From positions 1 through 64,000 of the forward strand of contig NW_027271602.1 of assembly GCF_040938485.1 (NCBI RefSeq): a DNA stretch of 64,000 nucleotides, in the 5' to 3' direction. Below, one piece after another: positions 19,296 to 62,048 of the stretch (the first letter of the stretch is position 1; every line of letters starts with the position of its first letter). The DNA is from Diadema antillarum. Lineage: Eukaryota. The notes beneath the pieces are model-generated. The model made no database searches, was not told where the DNA came from, and saw nothing but the letters and a program-made list of their open reading frames with translations. The position numbers and the translations under genes are program-made.

Positions 19296-43609
<24,314 letters not shown>

Positions 43610-46600: not shown

Positions 46601-49020
46601 TTAATCATCATCTTACACAAAATTGTTGGTTAATGCAGCTTTATGATTTATAAATTTCATGGCCAACCATCAATCCAGTCCCTCATTTTGTCCTTGTATG
46701 GCTCCTACACTCATTGGTGTTCTGAAATCTTCCAGAAAGAGAAACAGATGTGTGATTTCAGATGTCAGCTGATGAAGACAAAAACTTCAAGGGCGGGACT
46801 TCAAGTGATTTACAGTGCTGCAGGTGAACCCCATGATATTGAGGAACTTGGGGCAGCTGAATTTTCCTTGTCTTGACAAACACCCATATCTTGCAACATA
46901 ATTGTACACATGAAGAATTAGAGACTGCTACAAGTCCAACCCACTTCACAAATGAGAAATATCATCTTGTTAACATACTTTGGTGTCAAATCAATGGAAT
47001 GCCAAATTTTATACCAATTTTGTAGATATGTGTATTTCATAACTAGTAATTTCAATTCTCTGACTTTATATGGTTGATAAGATTGTATCTTATTCGCTTT
47101 ATGAAGGACAGGCAATACACCATATCAAGTGAAAACTGATTTTTTTTTTTTCCTTCCCGTTATATGTGAGTCACCTATTCGACAATCCTAACTGAAGAGT
47201 TCGTCGTCCTAAAATCTTGTGTGATGATGACTGGGAGGTAGCTATACCTCAACCTACTGAGTGAAATTTGCCCTCTCGAACAGTACACAGCTAGTGTCTA
47301 TAACTCATAACCTCTTGTGTGAGTGGTGAGCATGCAACATGCACCAAACATATGCAAAGTGCACAAGATGCCCAGCTGTTTAAAGATGCATGTTACACAA
47401 TTTGTGGCTGCAAAATCTGTTTGCAAAAAGTGAATTTTGCTGTATCAGTATTCAATATCATGGGATTCACGTGTAGGTATATGACCATTTCGTAGCATTG
47501 ATTAAATTCACTGAATACCTTTTGGAATGGCTTAGATTAGAAGCACCTTAGAATGGGGAGCAGAATCCCCCTCCCTTTCTCCAAAACACAAATCAAAAGA
47601 AATGAGAGAGAATTTAAAGTGAGGGAGAAAATACTGCATGAGGAATATGTTACACTGACATGCTTGGTTGAAGCAAGTTCCCCACTGTCGAACTCGTTTC
47701 ATACCTGCCAATTGTTCCCATGTCATAGGAACATTCCTGTTAGTATAGAAGAAGCTTCACTTAAACCTTACGTTCCTATTTTTGTCAATACCTGCTAATA
47801 GTAATGTATGGAAGATTGGTGAAATTTTCTATTTGTTCATTATTTTCTCCCTGTTATTCTTATACATACTAAATTTTAGGGTTGGCAGGTTTGTTTTTTT
47901 ATCTTGGCCTCATCACGACTACTTTTGGTATGCTAAGTCTCAATCTTGCAGACTCTGTGCTGGGAATTTTGACGGATTAACAATGCCGTGCTTATGTTCT
48001 TTCTGAATTCTGCGCACCTCTGACGTGAATGTGAGAAAATTTCTGCCCTTGAGAACGACTTGTTGATCAACTGAAGAAGTATGACCAGTGTAATCTGTCC
48101 TTGAATTTAAACTCCAGTAATGCTTCCCTTGATGCCATCGAGTGTGTGCACCCTCTGTGCAACATGTACTTACAGATGTCACTCTGAGCCACGTGTGTGG
48201 TATCTTTGCATAGCATACATGGCACGTGGGAATGTTTCATGTTTAGTTCTGCTGGGGGGAAAAAAATCTTATGTGGCCTGGAAATGTTTGCCAAAGTGAC
48301 ATTTCCACACAAGGTCCCAATTGAAAATGTTGATGATGATGTGTTTTTTTTTTCCTCTCTCTCTTCTTCTTTCTAACATCTCATATGTCATGTCAATACA
48401 GCACTCCTCCATGTGATGATAAAATCATTCAAGATGATTACCCATCGCATTGTTGATGTTGGTTTTACAAGTTACAAGCAACTGCTGAAAGTGTATTTGT
48501 ATATCAATCGCCAAATCACCAAATCAGACATTGAAATAGCTGAGTTGGACTAAAATATTGTACAGTTGAACTATTTTGGGATCTGTCTGTCTGTTCTCTT
48601 TTTCCCCCTGATATATGAAACTGAGTTAAACCGTTTTTACTTCCTCTTATTTTTTCCCTGTCCTGTATGTAACATTTGTCATAACCAAGACACAACTCTG
48701 GGGATCTGAAAAGCTCCCTCATGTGACAGAATTTTGACAGCTTTTGTTTTTGTAATATTCGATTTGTGTTGTTTATTTGTAACATAAAGACAGAGCAAAA
48801 ATGTTTTTTCAGGTTATTCTGCAGAAGAAGAAGAAAAAAAAAAGGCATGCATAGCTACGAAAAAAAAAAGCACTGTACAGGTATGAGAGAGATGTATAAA
48901 TATAAATAAAAAGAGAAGGAAAAAGTTATGTAATATTGTGCTCCTGTGGCTCCTGGTATATCTCGGATGTGTATATTGTGCATCTTATAATGTTCAATAA
49001 AAATTGAATGAACCGAATCG
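43610..49020 (+). other. Putative long Akt 3' UTR with alternative polyadenylation signals
   Basis: AATAAA at 44505, 44768, 48905 and 48996; the last is followed by a GT/T-rich tract. No recognisable transposon was seen in this span, unlike the flanks. The end point is inferred. Confidence 0.45.
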
Positions 49021-50115: not shown

Positions 50116-53100
50116 GTGTTCAATTCAAAATGTTTATAGTTACGTTGAAATACAGCTTGTTACTTAGTGAAATATGCAATCTTTTCCAAGTCGCCAAATT
50201 CGTCTTGTAACATGTTTCAAAGCATATAGAGGAATGCTAAACATCCCATTTTGATGCTTCAGAACTTAAACATGTGTTTGCATGAACTGCGAGGGTACGT
50301 AGAGAGCTCCCACTCCTTGAATAACGCCTCCCAGATCTTACAACGAACTTTGAGGGGATTTCAGAATCGTGTCGGAAGTGGTTTGATTGATAAGAACAGG
50401 CTATCTAGAGTTGCATTTTTTTTTTTTTTTTGGGGGGGGGCTGTTTATCGGATAGTTTATGCTTATATTCTACGTACATAGATACCTGTACAATGTAGCT
50501 GTAGCGTTAGCTGTAGTTGAATAATTGTTGTATTCTTCGGGGTCGGGTTAACTCGGCCCACGGGACATCTCGTCCCACCCGTTGAGGGTGGGCCGAGTTG
50601 TCCCACCCGTTGGTATCGATAGTGATCGTGAGCGCTTGTCTGTGTTTGAGTTTATTTCGTCTTTATGACGTCTTTTCTAACCGTAACTTTTATGGAATTG
50701 TGCTCATTGGTTTCTGTAAAGAATATTTGCCAACTTTTGGGGGATACAACGACGTAAAAATGAAATTTCAGACGTTTTTATCGCGGTTCGCGATCCCCAT
50801 AGGTTCACGTTCATTTCGCGCGGTGGGCTAACTCGGCCCAGCTAAGTTTTAGCTGTTGTTTTGTCAGTAAATCTCCGTAAAACTATCGATTTTATCATGT
50901 ATGAAGGTGTATTCAGGGTTCCTTCAATTAATTTCATCTTCGAGGGAATTTAATTTTGCACATGTTTGGTGAAATGTTGGATATTTGTTCGCATGATTTC
51001 ATCTTTGCCGTGTCCGCACCGCACTGGTCTCGCCACTGCACAGCTCGCTCACACACACAGGGGCAGAGCTGAGCTGGCAGCGCCATGCCCACTCGGGGAG
51101 GCGGGGCGGCGGGGCGCGGCGCGTGGGGCGCGAGCGGCAGAGGGAGCAGCCGGCCACTCCGTACCCGTATTAGTAGAAAAGAAATCAAATTATTTCTATC
51201 ATTCGATGTGAACTACATGAAGGTCATTATATGCATTTGATTTTAACTGTTAAATGTTTTGTTGTTGCTGTTGTTGTTGCTGATTTTATGTATAGATCTG
51301 CGTTCTACTCAAAAGTTATTTCTGTCCAATAAATGTTACCTTTTTTCTTAATAAAAACAAACAAGCAAAAGTCAAAGGGGTGAGTCTGTTTATGGGCATT
51401 ACCGTGGTAATTAATAAATTGTTTGATATCCAGTGGTCAGTTATTTGACCTGTAGATATGGATGGTTTGGTTGAGTGGTTGATATCATGAAACCGGTAAT
51501 GAAATGTAGTGCTAGCTAGATTGGCCTTGTTTATGATTGTAGGGCCTACCTTTTGTGTGTACTTTCAAAAATAAAAAGGAATTGTTTTTGTTTTGATGAC
51601 ATTGCCATTTTTGCCATGGGAATCCTTACCCTAATTCAAGAGAAAAATCCTCTGCCACCTGTACCTGCACGATAATAGCCAACCGTCAAGTTCTTTTTCT
51701 TTTTCTTCTTTGTAATTTTCTTTTTATATATGTACTGTATATACAGTGTATATCTCTCTCTCCCTCTAATGTATACTGTGATGATCTATTGAACCAAACT
51801 TGGACTTCATATCTTAATCTTTTCCATGCCTTAGCCCTATTACATGTATTAATCTTTTACATTTTTATTTATTTGTACAAAACAAGGCTGATTATAAAAT
51901 TCTCAAATCCTTGCTTGTCCTGCACTCATACTGTTGAATTCATGCACATTTTTTTTTTCTTTTTAACAAGCAGCAAAGATGAATAGCTTCTCAAATGGTC
52001 TTCCTTCTCAAGCACGGTACTCAAAGTGTTACCTAATTTGCAGTCATGCAGGGTCACAAAAGAAACATTACAACATGCACTGGTAGGCATTGGTAAGGTC
52101 ATGCATATAAGCTCTCATCTTCCTTCACAAAAGAATCTGTTGTTTTGTGGCCATTGCATCCTTTCGACTGTTGCCCTGCCTGCCCTTGATAACAATGTAC
52201 CGGTACTGCTCTTTCCAAGACTGCAAGATCACAGCAAATTTCGAATAATATTAATGTGAGCATGTAAAGTATGTTTTGTTTTGTTTTGTTTTGTCATTTT
52301 ACATCTATTACTTTATTATTTCCTTTCTATTTTTTTTTTCTTGAATAACAGAACATTCTCATTTGACTTGAAATAATACTTTCATTTTCAATTATCACAT
52401 TACCAAGTATCATCTGTGTACAAAGCTTTCTTTCCACAACTGCTTTGTAAAGTTCTGTATTTTTTTATGATTCTTCGTCTGGCTCTATAGATCGCCTACT
52501 GCCAATATTTCTGCTTCCTTTCCCCGTCTCTCTTTCACTCTTCCATCAACCCATTCTTTTCTTATGCGTGATGAATGTGTTTGTCAAGTGTCAAATGAGA
52601 TTTGATTTGAAACACTGCATACTTCATGTGAATTGCACACCAGTATTTTTTTTACCGAATTCATATTTACATAGAACAACTAGTGTGTGCATATCTACAC
52701 TGATGTTCAATGTAGACAAATTTGATATCTTTAATTTTAAAAAAAAGTCTCAAGTAGCGCTGTACTATGGATTAAAAACATATGTGACAAAAACATCATT
52801 TTTTTTAGAGTCATCACACTTCATCATCAGTGAATAGTGTGCATTCATAAAATGTGAATTTAATTCCACCACATTTTATAGTGTGTTATAACGGTAATAC
52901 AACATTTGTTCCTGTGACCTTGTAACAATTGCTCTGGTGTATTATTTTCTCCAAGGACTTGGGATCAAGGTTAGGATTGTGATAGGAGTAGGGTTAGAGT
53001 AATGCTCCTTTGTAGAATTTATGTTTGGTTTAGCATGCAGAATTTCAAGTGAACAATGTTTGCAGGAGCAAATGTCATGGAACCATTACGACACTGACTT

Positions 53101-54329
53101 CAGTCCTACTTCAGTTGATAGGCCTACTTCAGTCGATAGTTTGCTTTCTTCTAGATTTTCACCTCTTGACCTACCTGTAAAACATACATGTAGTTTACCA
53201 GATAGTTGCCAATTGATGAACTCTGCCCCAGGAGAGGTGCATCGCAGGAAATGAGATTGTTTTACGTATGTCAATCCACATACACGTCATGAAATGTTGC
53301 ATTATTGTAACACTCATTTCGGTGTCCAACATTATGCTCAGTCACTCCGCAAAACCAGACAATGTCCTCTCAAAACTGAATATTCACTACAGCTGTAGGG
53401 GCTGAAGAAAGCAGATCTGTTCTCAGTCAGTTCCAGTGGTAGACTCTTTTTAATTCTACCCACTTACTCTTTCCAGAGTAGTTAATTTACATATTAAAAT
53501 CATAAGATAGACAAATCAACCAAAACGAAAGGAGGAAAGTAGTTTCACCCGAGGACCGAAGGAACCGATGGAAAATAAAGGTAGGGCCTATAGGTGATCA
53601 CAAGGTGAAGTTGAACATGAATGGAAACAGATCAAAAGAGTTTGAGGACGTAGGTGTGGAGGTGAGTGGAGAAAATTAGGTTGTGTGGAAAACTAAATGT
53701 GGATAATTCATTAGGGGTATGTCTGAAAAGTAAACTACAAATATGGAAAGCTACACAAAACAACAAACCAAAGCTACACAAATTTAGTTTCTGGTCACAT
53801 TAATGCTATGACATCATTGTTAGGTGTTTTGTTGATATTTTTTGTATCTATTGGTTTTCCACTGATTGCAATACAGTATAAGACAAATAACCATAAATCT
53901 TAATGATTATAAATAGTCAAAATAAGAATTACAGTAAAGATAAAAAAAAAGAGCAGCTTACAAGATTGAGGCATGGCCACGGAGACTTTGCAAAACATAT
54001 AAGGGACTGAAAGGATATCCAAAACACACCAGAGACAGCCCCACAAACCAACATGAACTTACTCCATAGCTACACCGTACAGAAGCCAGATCCCATTTAT
54101 TATGAAGTTGGAGGTACCGGTACCGGGTACACATCGGTGTTTTGTTGATTTTTGCTCTATGAATTTGCACATTAGTCTTGCATGCTTCAAGTCATAAACA
54201 TAATTTACATAAACTTAACATATCTAAATTAACTAATAGGACCAATATCCAACATGTCAGAAGGATGCATATCACCTTCCATGTACCCGAAACAATTTAC
54301 GCCAAAAAAAAAAAATTAAAAAAATACAT

Positions 54330-55235
54330 TGTGTATTATGTTCACCATGGGCCTAATTATTGGAATGAACTTCCCAATATGCTGCACCGCACTACCTTCT
54401 TTCAAACATACTCTTAGGCTGCGTTCACATAGGAGTATACTATTTGGGTACACTTATAGCTTGAATCGAACGACAGGATTTCCTAACACCGGTTCACATA
54501 AGAGGACACTATTCGAAAATGCCATAGTGGGAATCGTGCTTGTTCGATTTTCTTGCAGCGTATACCATTTCTCGTTTATGAAATGATAACGATTTTGGTC
54601 TCGATTTGCCCTTTAGCAAAAATAAGCATGTAGACTGACATTCTGATGCAGTTTAGAAATTTTTAATAAGATTGCTGGGATGGTTGTGTACGAGGAAGAA
54701 ATCCGGATGGTGCAGGTGATGGTGTACTGGGTCGACTTGACGGCGCATAGCGAATAGCGAATAGTGAATACCGTATACCGAATACTTCTATGTGAACGCA
54801 GCCTTAAGTATTCGTTATTCGCTATTCGGGCACCGAGTACACCATAACCCGCACCGTCAACTCACCATCCCATGCAGTGAGGATTTCTTCCTCCTACATC
54901 CCAGCAAATCTTATTAACAATTTCTAAACTGCATCAGAATGTCAGTCTACATGCTTTTTTTTACTAAAGGGCAAATCCAGACCAAAAGTGTCATTATTTC
55001 ATAAACGAGAGACGGTATACGCTGCAAGAAAATCGAACAAGCTCGATTCCCACTTTGCTATACTTTTCGCAGCTATTCGGTACTTTCGAATAGTGCCCTC
55101 CTATGTGAACCCGTGTGAGGAAATCCCATCGTTCGATTCAGGCTATTCGCGTGCCCTCGAAAAACGAGCCCGAATACCCGAATAGTATACTTCTATGTGA
55201 ACGCAGCCTTAAAGCAACATCTTATTAGCAGCTAC
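54330..55235 (+). mobile_element. Possible LINE ORF2 C-terminal remnant split by a Harbinger insertion (54330-54416 and 55209-55235)
   Basis: HGPNYWNELP, then FKHTL / KQHLISSY, resembles the WNxLP..FKxxLK end of L2/CR1 ORF2 but needs frameshifts; AATAAA(TTGAAA)n tail at 55648-55669. Confidence 0.4.
54417..55208. mobile_element. PIF/Harbinger MITE as an inverted dimer
   Basis: TIR GGCTGCGTTCACATAG at 54417; reverse copies end at 54803 and 55208; TTA at 54414-54416, 54804-54806 and 55209-55211; right half is the reverse complement of the left half. Confidence 0.8.
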
Positions 55236-55260
55236 GGCACGCAAGTGCATCACCGGGTAC

Positions 55261-55593
55261 CTGGTAGCAAACTTGTTGCTTTTTTTCCTTGTCTATTCTT
55301 CTACTCCGGAGGGATCCTAACCAGGAATGCAGGTATTGATCAGCCTGCCTGTTATTCCACAAGTCCTTCATTATTGTACCTGATTTCAGAATTCTTGTAC
55401 GTGGCAGCTTGCTGGTTACCATGGTCACACAGTCTGGTTCTAAGTAGGAGCCCTGCTGGAATGTGACTCCTGATGAGCTTATTCTCCATGTATAAGTTGC
55501 AGCTGAACAAACTTGCTGGTATGTATAGGCCCCATCGTATTTCTAGTACCATAGCCCAGTTCTAAACTCACCTTTGACAGTGTTTGACTTCAT
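55261..55593 (-). CDS. Candidate spliced cargo ORF inside the MULE (exons 55593-55572 and 55502-55261), unknown protein
   Basis: AGCATGA start; AAAG|gtgagt donor; 69 nt intron; ttcag acceptor; 88 open codons; CAG|gtaccc donor. No family recognised. Confidence 0.28.
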
Positions 55594-56130
55594 GCTGAGA
55601 CAGACTGCTGTACATTATTTTATTTTGTCTGTACTATTTTCATGAGAAATAAATTGAAATTGAAATTGAGAGTAACAGGAATGGAAGAGACCAACTAAAA
55701 TGTAAAAACCCAACTCACTATGACTACAAATGAAAATAAACTGGACGAAGGTGTCAACAAGCTGAGGTGAGAACTTATTTCTTCTTTTTCTATGTCACTG
55801 TCGAACATCCCAATGTAGTGGCCGACTGTACAAGGGAAGTTAAGTTCGGACTACCGAACTTAATATGGAATGTTATTAACAACAGTATTTCTGTTAGCGA
55901 TTATAGTACATTGAATAAATATCACTTTGAAAACAGACTTCACCATAGTACTAGTAAATCATTTCACTTTTCAGACACAAAAAGGTGACATTGTCACAAA
56001 TTAAAACTCATATTATTTCACAAATGTTACATATTCGTAAATTAAGGAGCAGTGTCCCAACATAACGAATAGTGTCATCCGAGTCACGTGATAATTGCCA
56101 ACAATACAGCATGCATCCAAATCGTTATTT

Positions 56131-56161
<31 letters not shown>

Positions 56162-57519
56162 TGTGTGTGTGTTTTTTTTTCTTCTTTTTTTTAATTCAGT
56201 ATCAATCATTAATAACGTTGATGCTGGGGGATCTAAAGACAGAAAAACAGCAAAATGACAACTGCAAACTGCATGAGGTTGGAATACATATTATTGAGTC
56301 ATCCCGGAAAAAAAATATCAGAAAAAGATAAAAGACCATAAAAAAAAAACAGAAAAAACAGAGTCAAGCAACCCCCTACTGTATATGCCCAGCCTTTAGC
56401 AGAAACCCTTAACCTTGCCCTTTACCTTGGCATTGGCTGGCGGTAGCATGCACACCAGCTCAGCCCAATACACGCGACGTTGCAGCAAAACACAGTTGAG
56501 TTGAAACAAGTTGCTCCCTCTCTAGCTCTCAGCTCAAAGTTCAAGACAATCGATAGGACAATGCCAACTGACTAAGCTGCATAGAATTTACTCACACGAG
56601 AAAATTGGGAAGTGCAGCAAATGACGCCTTTTCCTCCAATTTCAACCACCGCCCGTATCCGTAGCGACGTTTACGGAGTGGCTGGCTGCTCCCTCTGTGC
56701 CGTTCGCGCGGGTGCCCCGCGCCGCCGCCCCGTGCCTTGCCGAGAGTGGGCATGGGCATGGCGCTGCTCAGCTCTCTCTCTGCCACTGTGATGTGTGAGC
56801 GAGCTGCTGGTGGCGAGACCGGTGCGGTGCGGATACGGCAAAGATGAAAACATGCGAACAAATATCCAACATTTCCCCAAACATGTGCAAAATTAAATTC
56901 CCTCGAAGATGAAATTAGTTGAAGAAACCCTGAATACACCTTCATACATGATAAAATTGATAGTTTTACGGAGATTTACTGACAAAACAACAGCTAAAAC
57001 TTAGCTGGGCCGAGTTAGCCCACCGCGCGAAATGAACGTGAACCTATGAGGATCGCGAACCGCGATAAAAACGTCTGAAATTTCATTTTTACGTCGTTGT
57101 ATCCCCCAAAAGTTGGCAAATACTCTTTACAGAAACCACTGAGCACAATTCTATAAAATTTACGGTTAAAAAAGACGTCACAAAGACAAAATAACCTCAA
57201 ACACAAACAAGCGCTCACGATCACTATCGATACCAACGGGTGGGACAACTCGGCCCACCCTCGACGGGTGGGACGAGTTGTCCCGTGGGCCGAGTTAGCC
57301 CGGATCCTATTCTTCGTATTAACCTCTTTCCTAGGAGACTCTTTAAAGGGACTGGGGAGGAGTGTTGGAACCCAAAATGCAAAAGTGCTATTTCATGACG
57401 TGAAACAGGCAAAAACAAGGACCAATGTCTATGAAAGGACTAAGCAATGAAAAAGAATCGATGAAAAATACGGCATTATGAAGATATCTATGATTTTTTG
57501 AAGAGCGTTTAACGCTTGT

Positions 57520-57871: not shown

Positions 57872-58057
57872 GTATGGAGATGGTGACAGAAAAATAAAAT
57901 GTAGAGTCCCAATTCCCCTCAAGACACTAGAAGATAAGGGGCTGAACGACAGAGATGTCATTTCACTTCGGCTGGATCGGTAATAAATTTGTGAAACTCG
58001 GAAGACCTCATAGAACTAGTCATACTAGTTCAGTGTGAGTAGGACCTAGGTCTATAA

Positions 58058-59816
58058 GGCCAAGTAAAAAAAGAAAGTAGTTTCTCGTCCGGGTTTTTTG
58101 AGCAAGGCGATGAGGGAGGTCCTTACTATTTGATATCTTACTATTTTTTCAAGGATCGTCAAAATGAAAGTAATATGTGTTTCTCGTCCGGTAATTCTGA
58201 GAAAGGTAACGAGAGGGGGCATTACAATTTTCTATATTCAATTTATGAAATGAAATATCACTCTGGTAGCTGTGTTATGAGACCAGGTCCCAAGTGTACG
58301 TCTTGCCTGCACTCTGTGCATTTTCAAACAAATAGATATATGTGCCATGCTTGAAATGAAACTTCATGCATGCAAAAATACATTTGCTTTTTCTTTCCAT
58401 AACAGATGTCAAGGGAAAATGACCATCTTAATAAAAAATAATACTGGTATTTAGTGTTGTAATGGCTTTTCTGATACCAGTGTACTTGCAATTCTGATGT
58501 ATTGTGCTGTTAATTGAAACAGGTATAAAACATGTCTTTCAACAAATGTACGACTGAAATAAATTCCATGATATTCAAAACACTGCTTTATTTATTGGTG
58601 TTTGTGACTTTTTGTGTCCACACAGCTGGTATGTATGCTGCAGTTCTTCACAGTACAATTGTAGCACATTCAACTGGAAACTGGCTTGTACAATTGCAGA
58701 TGGATGTCAAAATGATACTGATATGGCATTCTAGCATTAAACGTTTAAAGATGTTTCTTCATGTTCTAAAAAGACATTTGATAATCACTCATTATTTGGA
58801 TGATGAATGATTGTATAACAGTACACACTACAGATGATACCACTCACGGCTGTGTCCGTGAATTTACATCGTGAAGAAAAGTATCCCGCTGAAATACGAG
58901 ACAAACCAGAATCCGTGGAAAAGTTATTTTTTTTGTAGATACACCCATTTAATAATTCTACATTTGCTGGAAAAGCTCATTCATTTTCTCTTCAAAATAG
59001 AATGAATCGCCGTGACAGACCAGGGGATGGGGACCCTGGACAGCTACAAAACACGTACACTTCTTTGCCGATATACGGTGCGGCACGGCCACTGCACTGG
59101 CACCAGGGAGGTGTGGACCTCCCTGCTGGCACCGTACCTTCCGACACTGCACACACATGTACATAGTCACAATGACATGAAAATGTATACAAACTCGATA
59201 CCGTACAATCCTCACAAGCATTTGTACAGTACAATTCATCCGCTTAAAATATCAGAAACGGGGAAAAATACGAACAACGCGCGAAATATGCGTGGAATAT
59301 CAGCGATTGTTCGCAAAAATGTTGCCGCTATAGCGTTCACGACGTACCGAGTGCGCTGTACATCACAGCCCAGTAGGCCGGCCCGCCGCGCCGCCCATCC
59401 AACTACAGTGCAGTTCGACTGCTTTGTGGGTCATTCCTTCTTGCCGATCGGCCGAGCTCGCAGTGTGAAATGCATGCGTTATTACATACGCACTACACAC
59501 AGAAGCTACAGCTGTACTACAGTCTACAGCTATTAGTAGAGGACGCAAGGCGTAAAAAATTAGAAATGAGACGTCACGATTGGTAGGTGAATTGTCGATC
59601 TCTTTTTTTTCGGCGGCCGAAAAAATAGTAAATATCAAAAAAAGTCGATGCGGCAACTGAAAATCGATGCGGGCGGGGAGCGGGCTGGGACGAAAATTAT
59701 GAATTTCTTGGTATTTTCAGCGCCATTTTGAAAATAGTAAATAGTAAAAAAATCGATGCGGCGGCCAAAATCGATGCGCGCGAGGACGAGAAACTGGTTT
59801 CTTTTTTTACTTGGCC
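58058..59816. mobile_element. Non-autonomous PIF/Harbinger element, 1759 bp
   Basis: TAA|GGCCAAGTAAAAAAAGAAA..TTTCTCGTCC ... GGACGAGAAA..TTTCTTTTTTTACTTGGCC|TAA; AAAATCGATGCG subterminal repeats on the right. Confidence 0.85.
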
Positions 59817-60134
59817 TAACAACTGTTACAGTGTTTAGTGTTGTTAGTGTAACATTAATTGATAGAGATGTCACTTAGAGGATCTACACACACTATTGGC
59901 CTACTATTTAGTAATACTGATAGTAGGCCTAGATTAGTAATTTTGTTAGGTGTCCTATGCCACACCCTAACATTTTTCTATTAAACTAAAAGATATAGAC
60001 TTGTCTACTTTAGGCCTATCAGAGTTTGCCTGAGATTTTTAATACTCACATATGTGGAGAAAGGCTACATGCAGATTCACTAAAAGGTGTATTCAGAATG
60101 CGATTGAGGTATGGTAGGTATCTTAGACCTATGT

Positions 60135-60790
60135 ATTTTGAGACCCATAATTTAATGACATGAAAGTAGAATAGGGCAACATAATCCAGAATACGGTAAA
60201 ATAGGAATTCGCGTATTATCTACATGCAAAACACTTTATTAGCGTGCCATTTCTTAATGTGAACAGCGATTTATGTGTAGAAAGCATAGAGAAGCACATT
60301 TCAAAAAGGAGAAATGTTGAGCTAAATTTGGGATGTCATTCATAGGCAAAAAAAATTCCAGTTATGGTAACTATACACAGCCCAGTCGCTGTACGTACGT
60401 AGCGACAGGATTCGCACAGTGTACTTACAGCGTGTGGTCGGGCTACAGCTATAATGGCAGAGAAAAAGGGCCTCGGACTAGGAGTGGTAGACGCTGTAAG
60501 TACGGTACGCTGTGCGAATCCTGTCGCTATGTACCTACGTACAGCAACTGGGCTGTGTATAGTTACCATAAGTTAACATGGAAATTTTTTTGCCTATGAA
60601 TGACATCCCAAATTTGGCTCAACATTTCTCCTTTTTGAAATGTGCTTCTCTATTACACATAAATCGCTGTTCACAGTAAGAAATGGCACGCTATTTGTGT
60701 TTTGCATGTAAATACGCGAATTCCTATTTTACCGTATTCTGGATTATGTTGCCCTATTCTACCTTCATGTCAAATTATGTGTCTCAAAAT
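60135..60790. mobile_element. Foldback element, ~290 bp inverted arms with ~60 bp spacer
   Basis: 60135-60430 is the reverse complement of about 60495-60790; TSD not resolved. Confidence 0.8.
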
Positions 60791-61281
60791 GTCGAAATAA
60801 GAAAGTTACGACACTCATCAGAACTGACGTTTGTTACAAATTGGCGATAGGCGAGAAATCCAATTTTACGAACACCGAATGAATGAAAGTGTCAGCGAAT
60901 CTGGTAACTCTCGGTTTTTACAAAATACTTTGTGGAGACTCAACTGTGTATATGTTGTCATCACAGCTATGATCGGACCAAAAACGTGAATTCACATGTT
61001 TGGTAAGGTACCAGTACCTTGTTATTGTCTCCGGTACACATGGCATTGCAAAAATGTTGATTGAAGTGTATCTATTGTGCGTACATACATAAGTGGCTAA
61101 TGGCGTATATGCATTGTAGCGCAGTTCACTCGGTCTCTATAGTGTAGTGGTTAATGGTGTATGCTTTGTAGCACAGTAGGTGCTAATTGTTGAGAAAGGT
61201 CTGTCAGATATTATTGTGGGTATCTTTTGTAGAGCAACAGCCAGCATCGCATTCAAGGACCATCCTGACTAGGCAGCTCAG

Positions 61282-61607
61282 TGAAGCCAGTGACAGCCCC
61301 TCTGGTCAGTTGAGACCAGCCCTCCCAGCTACCCAGCTTGATGAAGCCAGTGAAATTCCCTCTCGTCAGTTTTGACCAGCTACCCAGCTCGGTGAAGCCA
61401 GTGACATCCCCTCTCATCAATTGAGACCAGCCCTCCTAGCTAACCAGCTTGATGAAGCCAGTGACATTCCCTCTCGTCAGTTTCGACCAGCTAGCCTATA
61501 CCCGGCTTGGTGAAGCCAGTGATGTCCCCTCTCATCAGTCGAGACCAGCCCTCCCAGCTTGATGAAGCCAGTGACATCCCCTCTTGCCCATTGAGACCAG
61601 CCCTTCC
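61282..61607 (+). repeat. Minisatellite of six 45-60 bp units (TGAAGCCAGTGAC...GACCAGC), coding-like
   Basis: The first units are 60, 51 and 60 bp; they translate as EASDIPS(H/R)Q(L/F)RPA..TQL(D/G) with an internal TGA. Confidence 0.8.
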
Positions 61608-62048
61608 GTTGGTACAAAAGGTTTGTACAAACTAACTTTAATTACCTGGTACTATTTTAATACACCTAGATCCAACAACTGTTTTGAACCTGCAAATGAA
61701 AGTTAATGTTGATATTTAGTACACAAAACATCAATAAATTGAATAGATAACTCTGTGTTCTCAAACGATGCTGTTCTTATTCTTGCTGTAATTTACCTTA
61801 TAACATTTTTTTTTAAAACCCAAAGCTGTGGTAGTGGTTAATAAGATTATGGTTGTCTTGATCATTACTTTTAGGGTTACAAGTTACATAGTTTGTACAT
61901 TGCAGCCACATATAGGCCTACTATATGATTGTATGTGGAATTATACAGACCCCCAAATCCCTTGCATGTGGCTGGATTGAAAGACATCATAGGCCCGATA
62001 TGAGGTTGTATACACAACATATAAATAAATAGGGCCTACTTTGTAGAT

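What the first reader, a model, noticed from the sequence alone, without database searches (positions are those of the whole stretch)
50540..57307. 6.8 kb Mutator-like element with ~630 bp TIRs, exact 9 bp TSD and no transposase: a possible animal Pack-MULE
Seen: two ~630 bp CpG-rich blocks in inverted orientation (about 9 mismatches in one ~120 bp stretch compared by eye). They are bracketed by identical TATTCTTCG 9-mers, with G...C ends. The 5.5 kb between them has no long ORF and reads like AT-rich intron/exon-type DNA with nested elements. Established: 9 bp TSDs plus long TIRs are hallmarks of the Mutator/MuDR superfamily, and non-autonomous MULEs carrying captured gene fragments (Pack-MULEs) are well known in plants. 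Inference: this is a single mobilised unit carrying foreign cargo, inserted about 1.5 kb past the putative Akt 3' end. I do not know of a well-described echinoderm equivalent, but I cannot search the literature.
Basis: partly seen in the sequence, partly recalled or inferred. Interest (0 to 1): 0.82.

Follow-up and report, generated by a model that had tools for sequence, protein, structure and literature searches.

The report
Non-autonomous long-TIR transposon, cargo unproven
This is a real 6.8-kb "jumping gene" copy in a sea-urchin genome that has lost, or never had, its own enzyme; it is most likely of the Mutator type, it shows no sign of carrying pieces of host genes, and elements like it are already known in animals.

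Summary
Window 50540-57307 is bounded by ~630-bp inverted repeats. The outer 484 bp are 96% identical and the inner GC-rich 132 bp are 74% identical. An exact 9-bp direct repeat, TATTCTTCG, abuts both ends (chance about 2e-4). Each terminus is a stable fold-back hairpin built from a 16-17-nt unit found only in the two arms. No Pfam domain, Rfam family, tRNA or credible exon lies inside, so the copy is non-autonomous.

Mutator membership is plausible (9-bp TSD, long TIRs, subterminal repeats) but unproven. No transposase link could be tested. Scan notes report young AcademH elements with 9-bp TSDs in this same genome (Diadema antillarum), though with TAG...CTA ends that this copy lacks.

The Pack-MULE reading is not supported. 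No coding signal was found, and no parental copy lies in the 64-kb window. One new clue: the interior is strongly CpG-depleted (o/e 0.37-0.53), like resident host DNA. The TIRs and a nested Harbinger-like MITE are not (about 1.2). So interior and TIRs probably have different histories.

Animal MULE derivatives carrying host fragments (Aedes) and 370 animal Pack-TIRs are already published. This is an ordinary new member of a known kind.

The parts
50531..50539 (.). Left target-site duplication, TATTCTTCG
   Evidence: Exact 9-mer abutting the left terminus; identical to 57308-57316
50540..51168 (+). Left terminal inverted repeat (~629 bp), CpG o/e 1.20
50540..50608 (+). Left terminal fold-back hairpin. 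It is built from the 16-17-nt unit GGGNTAACTCGGCCCA(C): two direct copies (50545, 50562) and one inverted copy (50588-50604). A further direct copy lies at 50825-50840.
   Evidence: repeat families D1, I1, I2; dG -24.7 kcal/mol, z -4.65, 0/200 shuffles as stable; the 12-mer core occurs 6 times in the window, all in the two arms, against 0.1 expected.
51037..51168 (+). Inner GC-rich (about 60% GC), more diverged part of the left TIR; a candidate inward-facing promoter-like region (inference only)
   Evidence: 73.8% identity, 15 gap columns
51169..54413 (.). Interior segment A: AT-rich, CpG-depleted (o/e 0.37, TpG+CpA o/e 1.35), with no coding signal
54414..55211 (.). Nested fold-back MITE with TIR GGCTGCGTTCACATAG, flanked by TTA on both sides (Harbinger/PIF-type 3-bp TSD). 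CpG o/e is 1.22. A third copy of the terminus lies at 54788-54803.
55212..56666 (.). Interior segment B: CpG-depleted (o/e 0.53), with a (TG)20 microsatellite at 56133-56172 and no coding signal
56596..56759 (-). Candidate relic first exon reading inward from the right TIR. An ATG in a GCC-ATG-CC context opens a 54-codon frame that ends at a GTGAGT splice donor. No homologue was found, so its status is unproven.
   Evidence: no hit
56667..57307 (-). Right terminal inverted repeat (~641 bp), CpG o/e 1.18, with a terminal fold-back hairpin at 57227-57307
   Evidence: dG -26.3 kcal/mol, z -4.86.
57308..57316 (.). Right target-site duplication, TATTCTTCG

Best explanation
This is one copy of a non-autonomous cut-and-paste DNA transposon with ~630-bp terminal inverted repeats, most likely of the Mutator superfamily (MuDR/Rehavkus-type).

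Shown: the two arms, the exact 9-bp target-site duplication, the fold-back termini made of a repeated 16-17-nt unit, and the absence of any transposase or other recognisable coding sequence.

Inferred mechanism: a transposase made elsewhere in the genome binds the repeated subterminal units in both arms and pairs the ends. It excises the whole 6.77-kb unit and inserts it at a target cut with a 9-bp stagger. Repair of that stagger gives the TATTCTTCG duplication.

The 4.7 kb of interior outside the nested MITE is passive, non-coding DNA. Its CpG depletion marks it as long-methylated, host-type sequence with a different history from the CpG-rich TIRs. It is probably filler acquired between the TIRs, either by gap repair at some locus or by capture before transposition. 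It is not a set of captured exons.

The insertion lies about 6.9 kb downstream of the stop codon of an Akt-like kinase gene, about 1.5 kb beyond that gene's likely poly(A) signals.
For: TIRs and TSD.

Motif: the 12-mer core is confined to the arms, 6 matches against 0.1 expected. The unit structure is, and the hairpins have z -4.65 and -4.86.

No coding content: no Pfam domain at E<=0.001 in 78 stop-free pieces, no Rfam family or tRNA, ORF lengths as expected by chance, no exon or coding signal above controls.

CpG mosaic: TIRs 1.20/1.18 and MITE 1.22, against interior 0.37/0.53 and window background 0.51. TpG+CpA is in excess only in the interior.

Published MULE criteria: 8-11 bp TSD and TIRs of hundreds of bp (PMC6446971). 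Animal MULEs have 8-9 bp TSDs, TIRs >100 bp, subterminal repeats, fold-back-type TIRs and non-autonomous derivatives with heterogeneous interiors (PMC5225508).

Unverified scan notes report MULE-type transposase genes in the same genome.
Against: No other copy of the TIR could be found, so family membership, copy number and the autonomous partner are untested. The failed searches were made; the tools do not include this genome.

AcademH (9-10 bp TSD, from my own recollection of Kojima 2020, Mob DNA 11:15, which is not held) is reported as young and abundant in this genome by scan notes. Merlin also makes 8-9 bp TSDs.

The first 10 nt of the two termini differ at 2 sites plus 1 indel. That is less conserved than the next 480 bp, which is odd for a recently mobile copy.

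The CpG contrast could instead reflect a protected promoter-like TIR next to a transcribed, methylated element body.
Confidence: 0.6

Rival explanations
1. A non-autonomous derivative of an AcademH transposon. It would be mobilised in trans by the 18-20-kb transposase-plus-RecQ-helicase elements that the scan notes describe as young in this genome, and which also make 9-bp TSDs and can have long TIRs.
For: Scan notes, unverified here: AcademH copies with 9-bp TSDs, ~950-bp TIRs and 'cargo-carrying' transposase-less relatives with fold-back termini in the same genome. The TSD here is 9 bp and the termini are fold-backs.
Against: The notes describe AcademH ends as TAG...CTA. This element ends GGGTC.../...GGATCC. 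No RecQ, helicase or Academ relic was found in any stop-free piece. AcademH terminal signatures could not be checked in the literature because the paper is not held.
Confidence: 0.13
2. A true Pack-MULE: the interior contains fragments of one or more host genes (exons plus introns). These were captured by a MULE and then transposed as a unit, and may be expressed as chimeric transcripts from the TIR.
For: The interior has the CpG-depleted, TpG/CpA-enriched signature of long-methylated gene-body-type DNA, unlike the TIRs. A candidate ATG-to-GTGAGT first exon sits at the inner edge of the right TIR. Four stop-free runs >=100 aa were observed against a shuffle mean of 1.24; 3% of shuffles do as well.
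Against: No Pfam domain in any piece >=40 aa. Exon candidates are no denser than on the Akt antisense control. The best coding score, 0.022, lies inside the control range, whose maximum is 0.131. No parental copy lies within the 64-kb window, although most single-copy animal Pack-TIRs have one within 15 kb (PMC8277862). Typical captured pieces are ~220-300 bp, not 4.7 kb (PMC8277862).
Confidence: 0.12
3. A member of another or an undescribed superfamily that makes 8-9 bp TSDs (for example Merlin), with the long TIRs being a family peculiarity.
For: The TSD length is compatible. GG-type termini are not diagnostic. No transposase link has been established.
Against: By my own recollection, TIRs of hundreds of bp with subterminal repeat units are typical of MULEs and unusual for Merlin. 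Published animal MULE architecture matches well (PMC5225508).
Confidence: 0.1
4. Not a single transposon. Instead, two independent insertions or an inverted segmental duplication flank resident DNA, and the 9-mer match is coincidental.
For: The interior's composition is indistinguishable from the resident DNA of the window.
Against: An exact 9/9 direct repeat abuts both outer ends, with chance about 2e-4. The inner ends of the blocks carry no terminal motif and no TSD of their own. The arms differ by 4-26%, so they are not an assembly duplication.
Confidence: 0.03

Closest known systems
Non-autonomous derivatives of Aedes aegypti Muta families (animal MULEs; Liu & Wessler 2017, PMC5225508)
   Same: 8-9 bp TSD, TIRs >100 bp, short subterminal repeat units, fold-back-type TIR structure, no transposase, and a heterogeneous non-family interior between conserved TIRs.
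   Different: The TIRs here are much longer (~630 bp against ~145-150 bp). There are only 3-4 copies of the unit per arm, against 9 tandem copies. The interior is far larger (5.5 kb). No autonomous partner or sibling copies are known yet.
Plant Pack-MULEs and animal Pack-TIRs (Tan et al. 2021, PMC8277862)
   Same: TIR pair plus TSD enclosing non-transposase DNA. The interior's composition differs from that of the TIRs.
   Different: No parental gene or locus was identified and no exon signal was found.
Rehavkus group of MuDR (Repbase; summarised in PMC6446971)
   Same: 9-bp TSD; TIRs up to hundreds of bp; animal hosts. An unverified scan note reports a PHD-FLYWCH-MULE transposase in this genome.
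   Different: Rehavkus is defined by its PHD-finger transposase and a minisatellite before the 3' TIR. Neither is present in this copy.
AcademH transposons (Kojima 2020, recalled from memory; scan notes)
   Same: 9-bp TSD, long TIRs, presence in this genome, and transposase-less relatives.
   Different: The reported TAG...CTA ends are not present here, and there is no helicase or transposase relic.

Membership tests
Mutator superfamily (MULE), non-autonomous member | Target-site duplication of 8-11 bp (typically 9) | tested here: met
   Exact 9-bp TATTCTTCG on both sides, not extendable. Criterion from PMC6446971 and PMC5225508.
Mutator superfamily (MULE), non-autonomous member | Long terminal inverted repeats (>100 bp) | tested here: met
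   ~630-bp arms: 96% identity over the outer 484-493 bp, 74% over the inner 132 bp.
Mutator superfamily (MULE), non-autonomous member | Subterminal short repeats (putative transposase-binding sites) within the TIRs | tested here: met
   A 16-17-nt unit occurs 3-4 times per arm and nowhere else in 64 kb. This is typical of MULEs but not exclusive to them.
Mutator superfamily (MULE), non-autonomous member | Shares its termini with an autonomous element encoding a MULE DDE transposase (PF10551-type) | not testable with these tools
   The host genome is not searchable here. Probes of the protein and DNA collections found nothing.
Mutator superfamily (MULE), non-autonomous member | Terminal 11 nt match a classified MuDR family (the Repbase rule for non-autonomous elements, PMC4455052) | not testable with these tools
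   No Repbase or Dfam library is available.
Pack-MULE / Pack-TIR | The interior derives from a non-TE parental locus or host gene found elsewhere in the genome without flanking TIRs | tested here: inconclusive
   No parental copy in the 64-kb window, and the rest of the genome could not be tested. CpG depletion suggests host-type DNA.
Pack-MULE / Pack-TIR | The interior contains fragments of host protein-coding genes | tested here: not met
   No Pfam hit in 78 pieces. No exon enrichment. Coding score within the control range. ORF lengths as expected by chance. Short or fast-evolving exons could be missed.
Pack-MULE / Pack-TIR | Sibling elements with the same TIRs but different interiors | not testable with these tools
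   No other copy is accessible.
AcademH (non-autonomous) | 9-10 bp TSD | tested here: met
   9 bp. The criterion comes from my own recollection of Kojima 2020 and from scan notes.
AcademH (non-autonomous) | TAG...CTA termini, as described for the Diadema copies in unverified scan notes | tested here: not met
   The ends are GGGTC... and ...GGATCC.
Rehavkus | PHD-finger MULE transposase and a minisatellite before the 3' TIR | tested here: not met
   No PHD or MULE domain. No minisatellite next to either TIR. A missing transposase is expected in a non-autonomous copy, so this does not exclude trans-mobilisation by a Rehavkus-type enzyme.

The most novel reading that the evidence does not exclude
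An echinoderm MULE has captured several kilobases of host gene-body-type DNA, an order of magnitude more than typical Pack-MULE or Pack-TIR cargo, and has moved it as a unit. That would make it a large-cargo Pack-MULE in a deuterostome invertebrate, whose CpG mosaic records the separate origins of TIRs and cargo.
Probability: 0.15. Interest if true: 0.45.

Novelty: new member of a known kind. Interest (0 to 1): 0.22.

Why it matters
As it stands this is routine repeat annotation: one more non-autonomous long-TIR DNA transposon, downstream of an Akt-like gene, in a TE-rich sea-urchin genome.

It has modest value in three ways.

- It supplies precise ends, a TSD and candidate transposase-binding units. 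These could seed a family consensus and help find an active Mutator-type element in Diadema.
- The CpG-mosaic argument is a cheap, alignment-free way to flag transposons whose interior has a different history from their ends, in genomes with mosaic methylation.
- If genome-wide searches showed a TIR-free parental locus, it would be an unusually large animal Pack-TIR.

Tried and rejected
1. Using spurious ORFs inside the TIR as protein probes for other copies. The 81-aa piece had no candidates. The 127-aa piece, which spans the inner right TIR and the candidate exon, gave 16 candidates with none significant.

2. Exact 18-mer of the terminus in public DNA collections. Viral contigs gave 0 and prokaryotic genomes gave 0. 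Metagenomes gave 2 hits; both are 18-21-nt chance matches in 58-64% GC contigs with no extension.

3. Rfam and tRNA scans of 49.5-58.5 kb found nothing.

4. A search for a parental or related sequence in the rest of the window at relaxed BLASTN settings found nothing except microsatellite matches.

5. The search of earlier findings by sequence with the TIR came back blank.

6. The AcademH paper could not be read; it is not held.

7. I rejected dating the insertion from arm divergence, because TIR arms need not be identical at the time of insertion.

8. I deliberately did not run the single exhaustive protein search or the third word search. No interior piece scored above the non-coding controls. 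One piece would cover only about 2% of the six-frame space, and the operators flagged the cost.
Full report
**Observation**

The feature is real and sits at the stated coordinates. The repeat finder reports inverted arms 50544-51036 and 56810-57302: 493 nt, 96% complementary. A gapped alignment and BLASTN extend the homology inward to 51168 and 56667, so each arm is about 630 bp. By segment, the outer 484 bp are 96.1% identical (19 mismatches, 13 of them transitions). The inner GC-rich 132 bp are only 73.8% identical, with 15 gap columns.

The 9-mer TATTCTTCG abuts both ends exactly, at 50531-50539 and 57308-57316. It cannot be extended on either side. Allowing +-3 bp of slop at each boundary, the chance of such a match is about 2e-4.

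The ends read GGGTCGGGTTAACTCGG... on the left and, reverse-complemented, GGATCCGGGCTAACTCGG... on the right. The first ten bases nonetheless differ at two sites plus one indel, so they are less conserved than the following 480 bp.

**Fine structure of the ends**

A 12-mer core, TAACTCGGCCCA, occurs six times in the 64-kb window. All six are inside the two arms, against 0.1 expected by chance. The core is part of a 16-17-nt unit, GGGNTAACTCGGCCCA(C). Each arm has two tandem direct copies of this unit at the tip, one inverted copy about 45 bp in, and another direct copy about 285 bp in.

As a result, the outer ~65 nt of each arm fold into a stable hairpin. The free energies are -24.7 and -26.3 kcal/mol, with z -4.65 and -4.86, and none of 200 shuffles was as stable in either arm. 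Repeated subterminal units and fold-back-type TIRs are what Liu & Wessler describe for animal MULEs in Aedes aegypti (PMC5225508). I take the units to be the transposase-binding sites; that is an inference.

**Content**

I scanned 78 stop-free pieces of at least 40 aa from all six frames against Pfam. The best E-value was 0.0014, for an unrelated membrane family, which is chance level for 78 queries. There was no MULE, SWIM, FLYWCH, PHD, helicase or any other transposon-related domain. There is no Rfam family and no tRNA.

The longest stop-free runs (128 aa, twice) are reached by 20% of local dinucleotide shuffles. Four runs of at least 100 aa, against a shuffle mean of 1.24, is only mildly unusual: 3% of shuffles do as well.

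A crude splice-site-bounded exon scan recovered real Akt exons. In the interior it found candidates at the same density as on the Akt antisense strand: 10 in 11.3 kb against 12 in 14 kb. On an amino-acid-composition coding score, the best interior piece reached 0.022. The antisense control maximum was 0.131, and real Akt exons mostly scored 0.06-0.15.

The copy is therefore non-autonomous and shows no detectable coding cargo.

One item deserves mention. Reading inward from the right TIR on the minus strand, an ATG at 56759 opens a 54-codon frame. The frame ends at a canonical GTGAGT donor; the last exon base is 56596. It found no homologue, so it remains only a candidate relic first exon.

**Nested element**

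A ~0.8-kb fold-back MITE lies at 54414-55211. Its terminal sequence GGCTGCGTTCACATAG is flanked by TTA on both sides, which is a Harbinger/PIF-type 3-bp duplication. A third copy of the terminus lies near its centre.

**Composition: the one new clue**

| Region | CpG o/e | TpG+CpA o/e |
|---|---|---|
| Left and right TIR | 1.20 and 1.18 | about 1.0 |
| Nested MITE | 1.22 | about 1.0 |
| Interior segment A | 0.37 | 1.33-1.35 |
| Interior segment B | 0.53 | 1.33-1.35 |
| Window background | 0.51 | |
| Akt gene body | 0.51 | |

In animals with mosaic methylation, CpG depletion with an excess of the decay products marks long-term germline methylation, typically of gene bodies. That is established knowledge and was not tested here.

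If the element moved as a unit, the TIRs have been at this locus exactly as long as the interior. The interior's depletion therefore cannot have arisen in place. The interior and the TIRs have different histories. This favours host-type filler DNA placed between the TIRs, by gap repair or by capture, as discussed for animal Pack-TIRs (PMC8277862).

The rival reading is that the TIRs act as protected, promoter-like CpG islands next to a transcribed and methylated element body. Neither reading shows that gene fragments were captured.

**Context**

An Akt-like AGC kinase lies on the plus strand. Four stop-free pieces of at least 75 aa in the window match the Pfam protein kinase domain (best E 4.6e-18), and exons carrying Akt-typical motifs run from about 32.8 to 43.6 kb. 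The gene ends with FEKFSY...LQK and a stop at about 43609.

The insertion is therefore 6.9 kb past the stop codon. AATAAA signals at 48905 and 48996 coincide with the end of the CpG-depleted block at about 49 kb.

The right flank holds other apparently young repeats, listed under items noticed in passing.

**Which superfamily?**

Published criteria for MULEs are 8-11 bp TSDs and TIRs commonly hundreds of bp long (PMC6446971). Animal MULEs show 8-9 bp TSDs, TIRs >100 bp and subterminal repeats (PMC5225508). All of these are met here.

The scan's own unverified notes say this genome is Diadema antillarum. They also say it holds young 18-20-kb AcademH elements with 9-bp TSDs, some with ~950-bp TIRs, TAG...CTA ends and transposase-less relatives. 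So '9-bp TSD plus long TIRs' is not diagnostic of Mutator in this genome.

The present ends are not TAG...CTA, which counts against AcademH. The notes also list MULE-type genes in this genome, including a PHD-FLYWCH-MULE transposase.

My estimates are: Mutator including Rehavkus-type about 0.6, AcademH about 0.13, another or an unknown superfamily about 0.1. The remainder covers the interior-related and artefact rivals.

**Novelty**

- 370 Pack-TIRs were catalogued in 100 animal genomes, with mechanisms proposed (PMC8277862).
- MULEs have been found in echinoderm genomes (PMC6446971).

This is a new member of a known kind. Only the size of the interior (5.5 kb against a median of ~220-300 bp) would be unusual, and only if it proved to be captured host DNA.

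**What could not be done**

No second copy was found, and no empty site or parental locus could be sought. I left the exhaustive protein search unused. No interior piece rose above the non-coding controls, and a single piece would test only a tiny fraction of the interior.

**Verdict**

This is a real, ordinary, non-autonomous long-TIR DNA transposon copy. It is probably Mutator-type. The Pack-MULE reading is unsupported, apart from a compositional hint that the interior is host-like DNA.

Noticed in passing
window 54414-55211: A ~0.8-kb fold-back MITE lies nested in the element. It has the terminus GGCTGCGTTCACATAG, TTA on both sides (Harbinger/PIF-type TSD), arms up to 92% complementary, an extra internal copy of the right terminus at 54782-54807, and CpG o/e 1.22.
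   Followed up: partly
window 60156-60772: A ~620-bp near-perfect palindrome or fold-back element in the right flank, with arms 95-98% complementary in several blocks. It looks like a young MITE or fold-back insertion.
   Followed up: no
window 58057-59817: A 34-nt inverted repeat pair (94% complementary) brackets ~1.76 kb, so this may be another TIR element. Direct repeats of a 60-nt unit with 99-bp spacing lie just inside its left end (58080-58238).
   Followed up: no
window 61269-61611: A tandem array with a ~55-60-bp unit (111-bp higher-order unit), six or more copies at 74-90% identity.
   Followed up: no
window 32800-43609 (+ strand): An Akt/PKB-like AGC kinase gene. Its exons carry [28 protein letters not shown]...[22 protein letters not shown] and a C-terminal FEKFSY motif. 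The stop codon is at ~43607-43609.
   Followed up: partly
window 1-64000: CpG o/e is mosaic. Resident DNA sits at 0.2-0.6, while islands near 1.0-1.25 fall at 32-33 kb, 49-51 kb, 57-58 kb and 59-61 kb. Those I examined (the TIRs, the nested MITE and the repeats at 58-61 kb) coincide with apparently young repeats. The CpG-depleted block ends at ~49 kb, next to the AATAAA signals at 48905 and 48996.
   Followed up: partly
window 56596-56759 (- strand): An ATG in a GC-rich context at the inner edge of the right TIR opens a 54-codon frame that ends at a GTGAGT donor. The equivalent left-arm frame starts with a similar peptide but has no donor. This could be a relic first exon or a chance feature.
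   Followed up: partly
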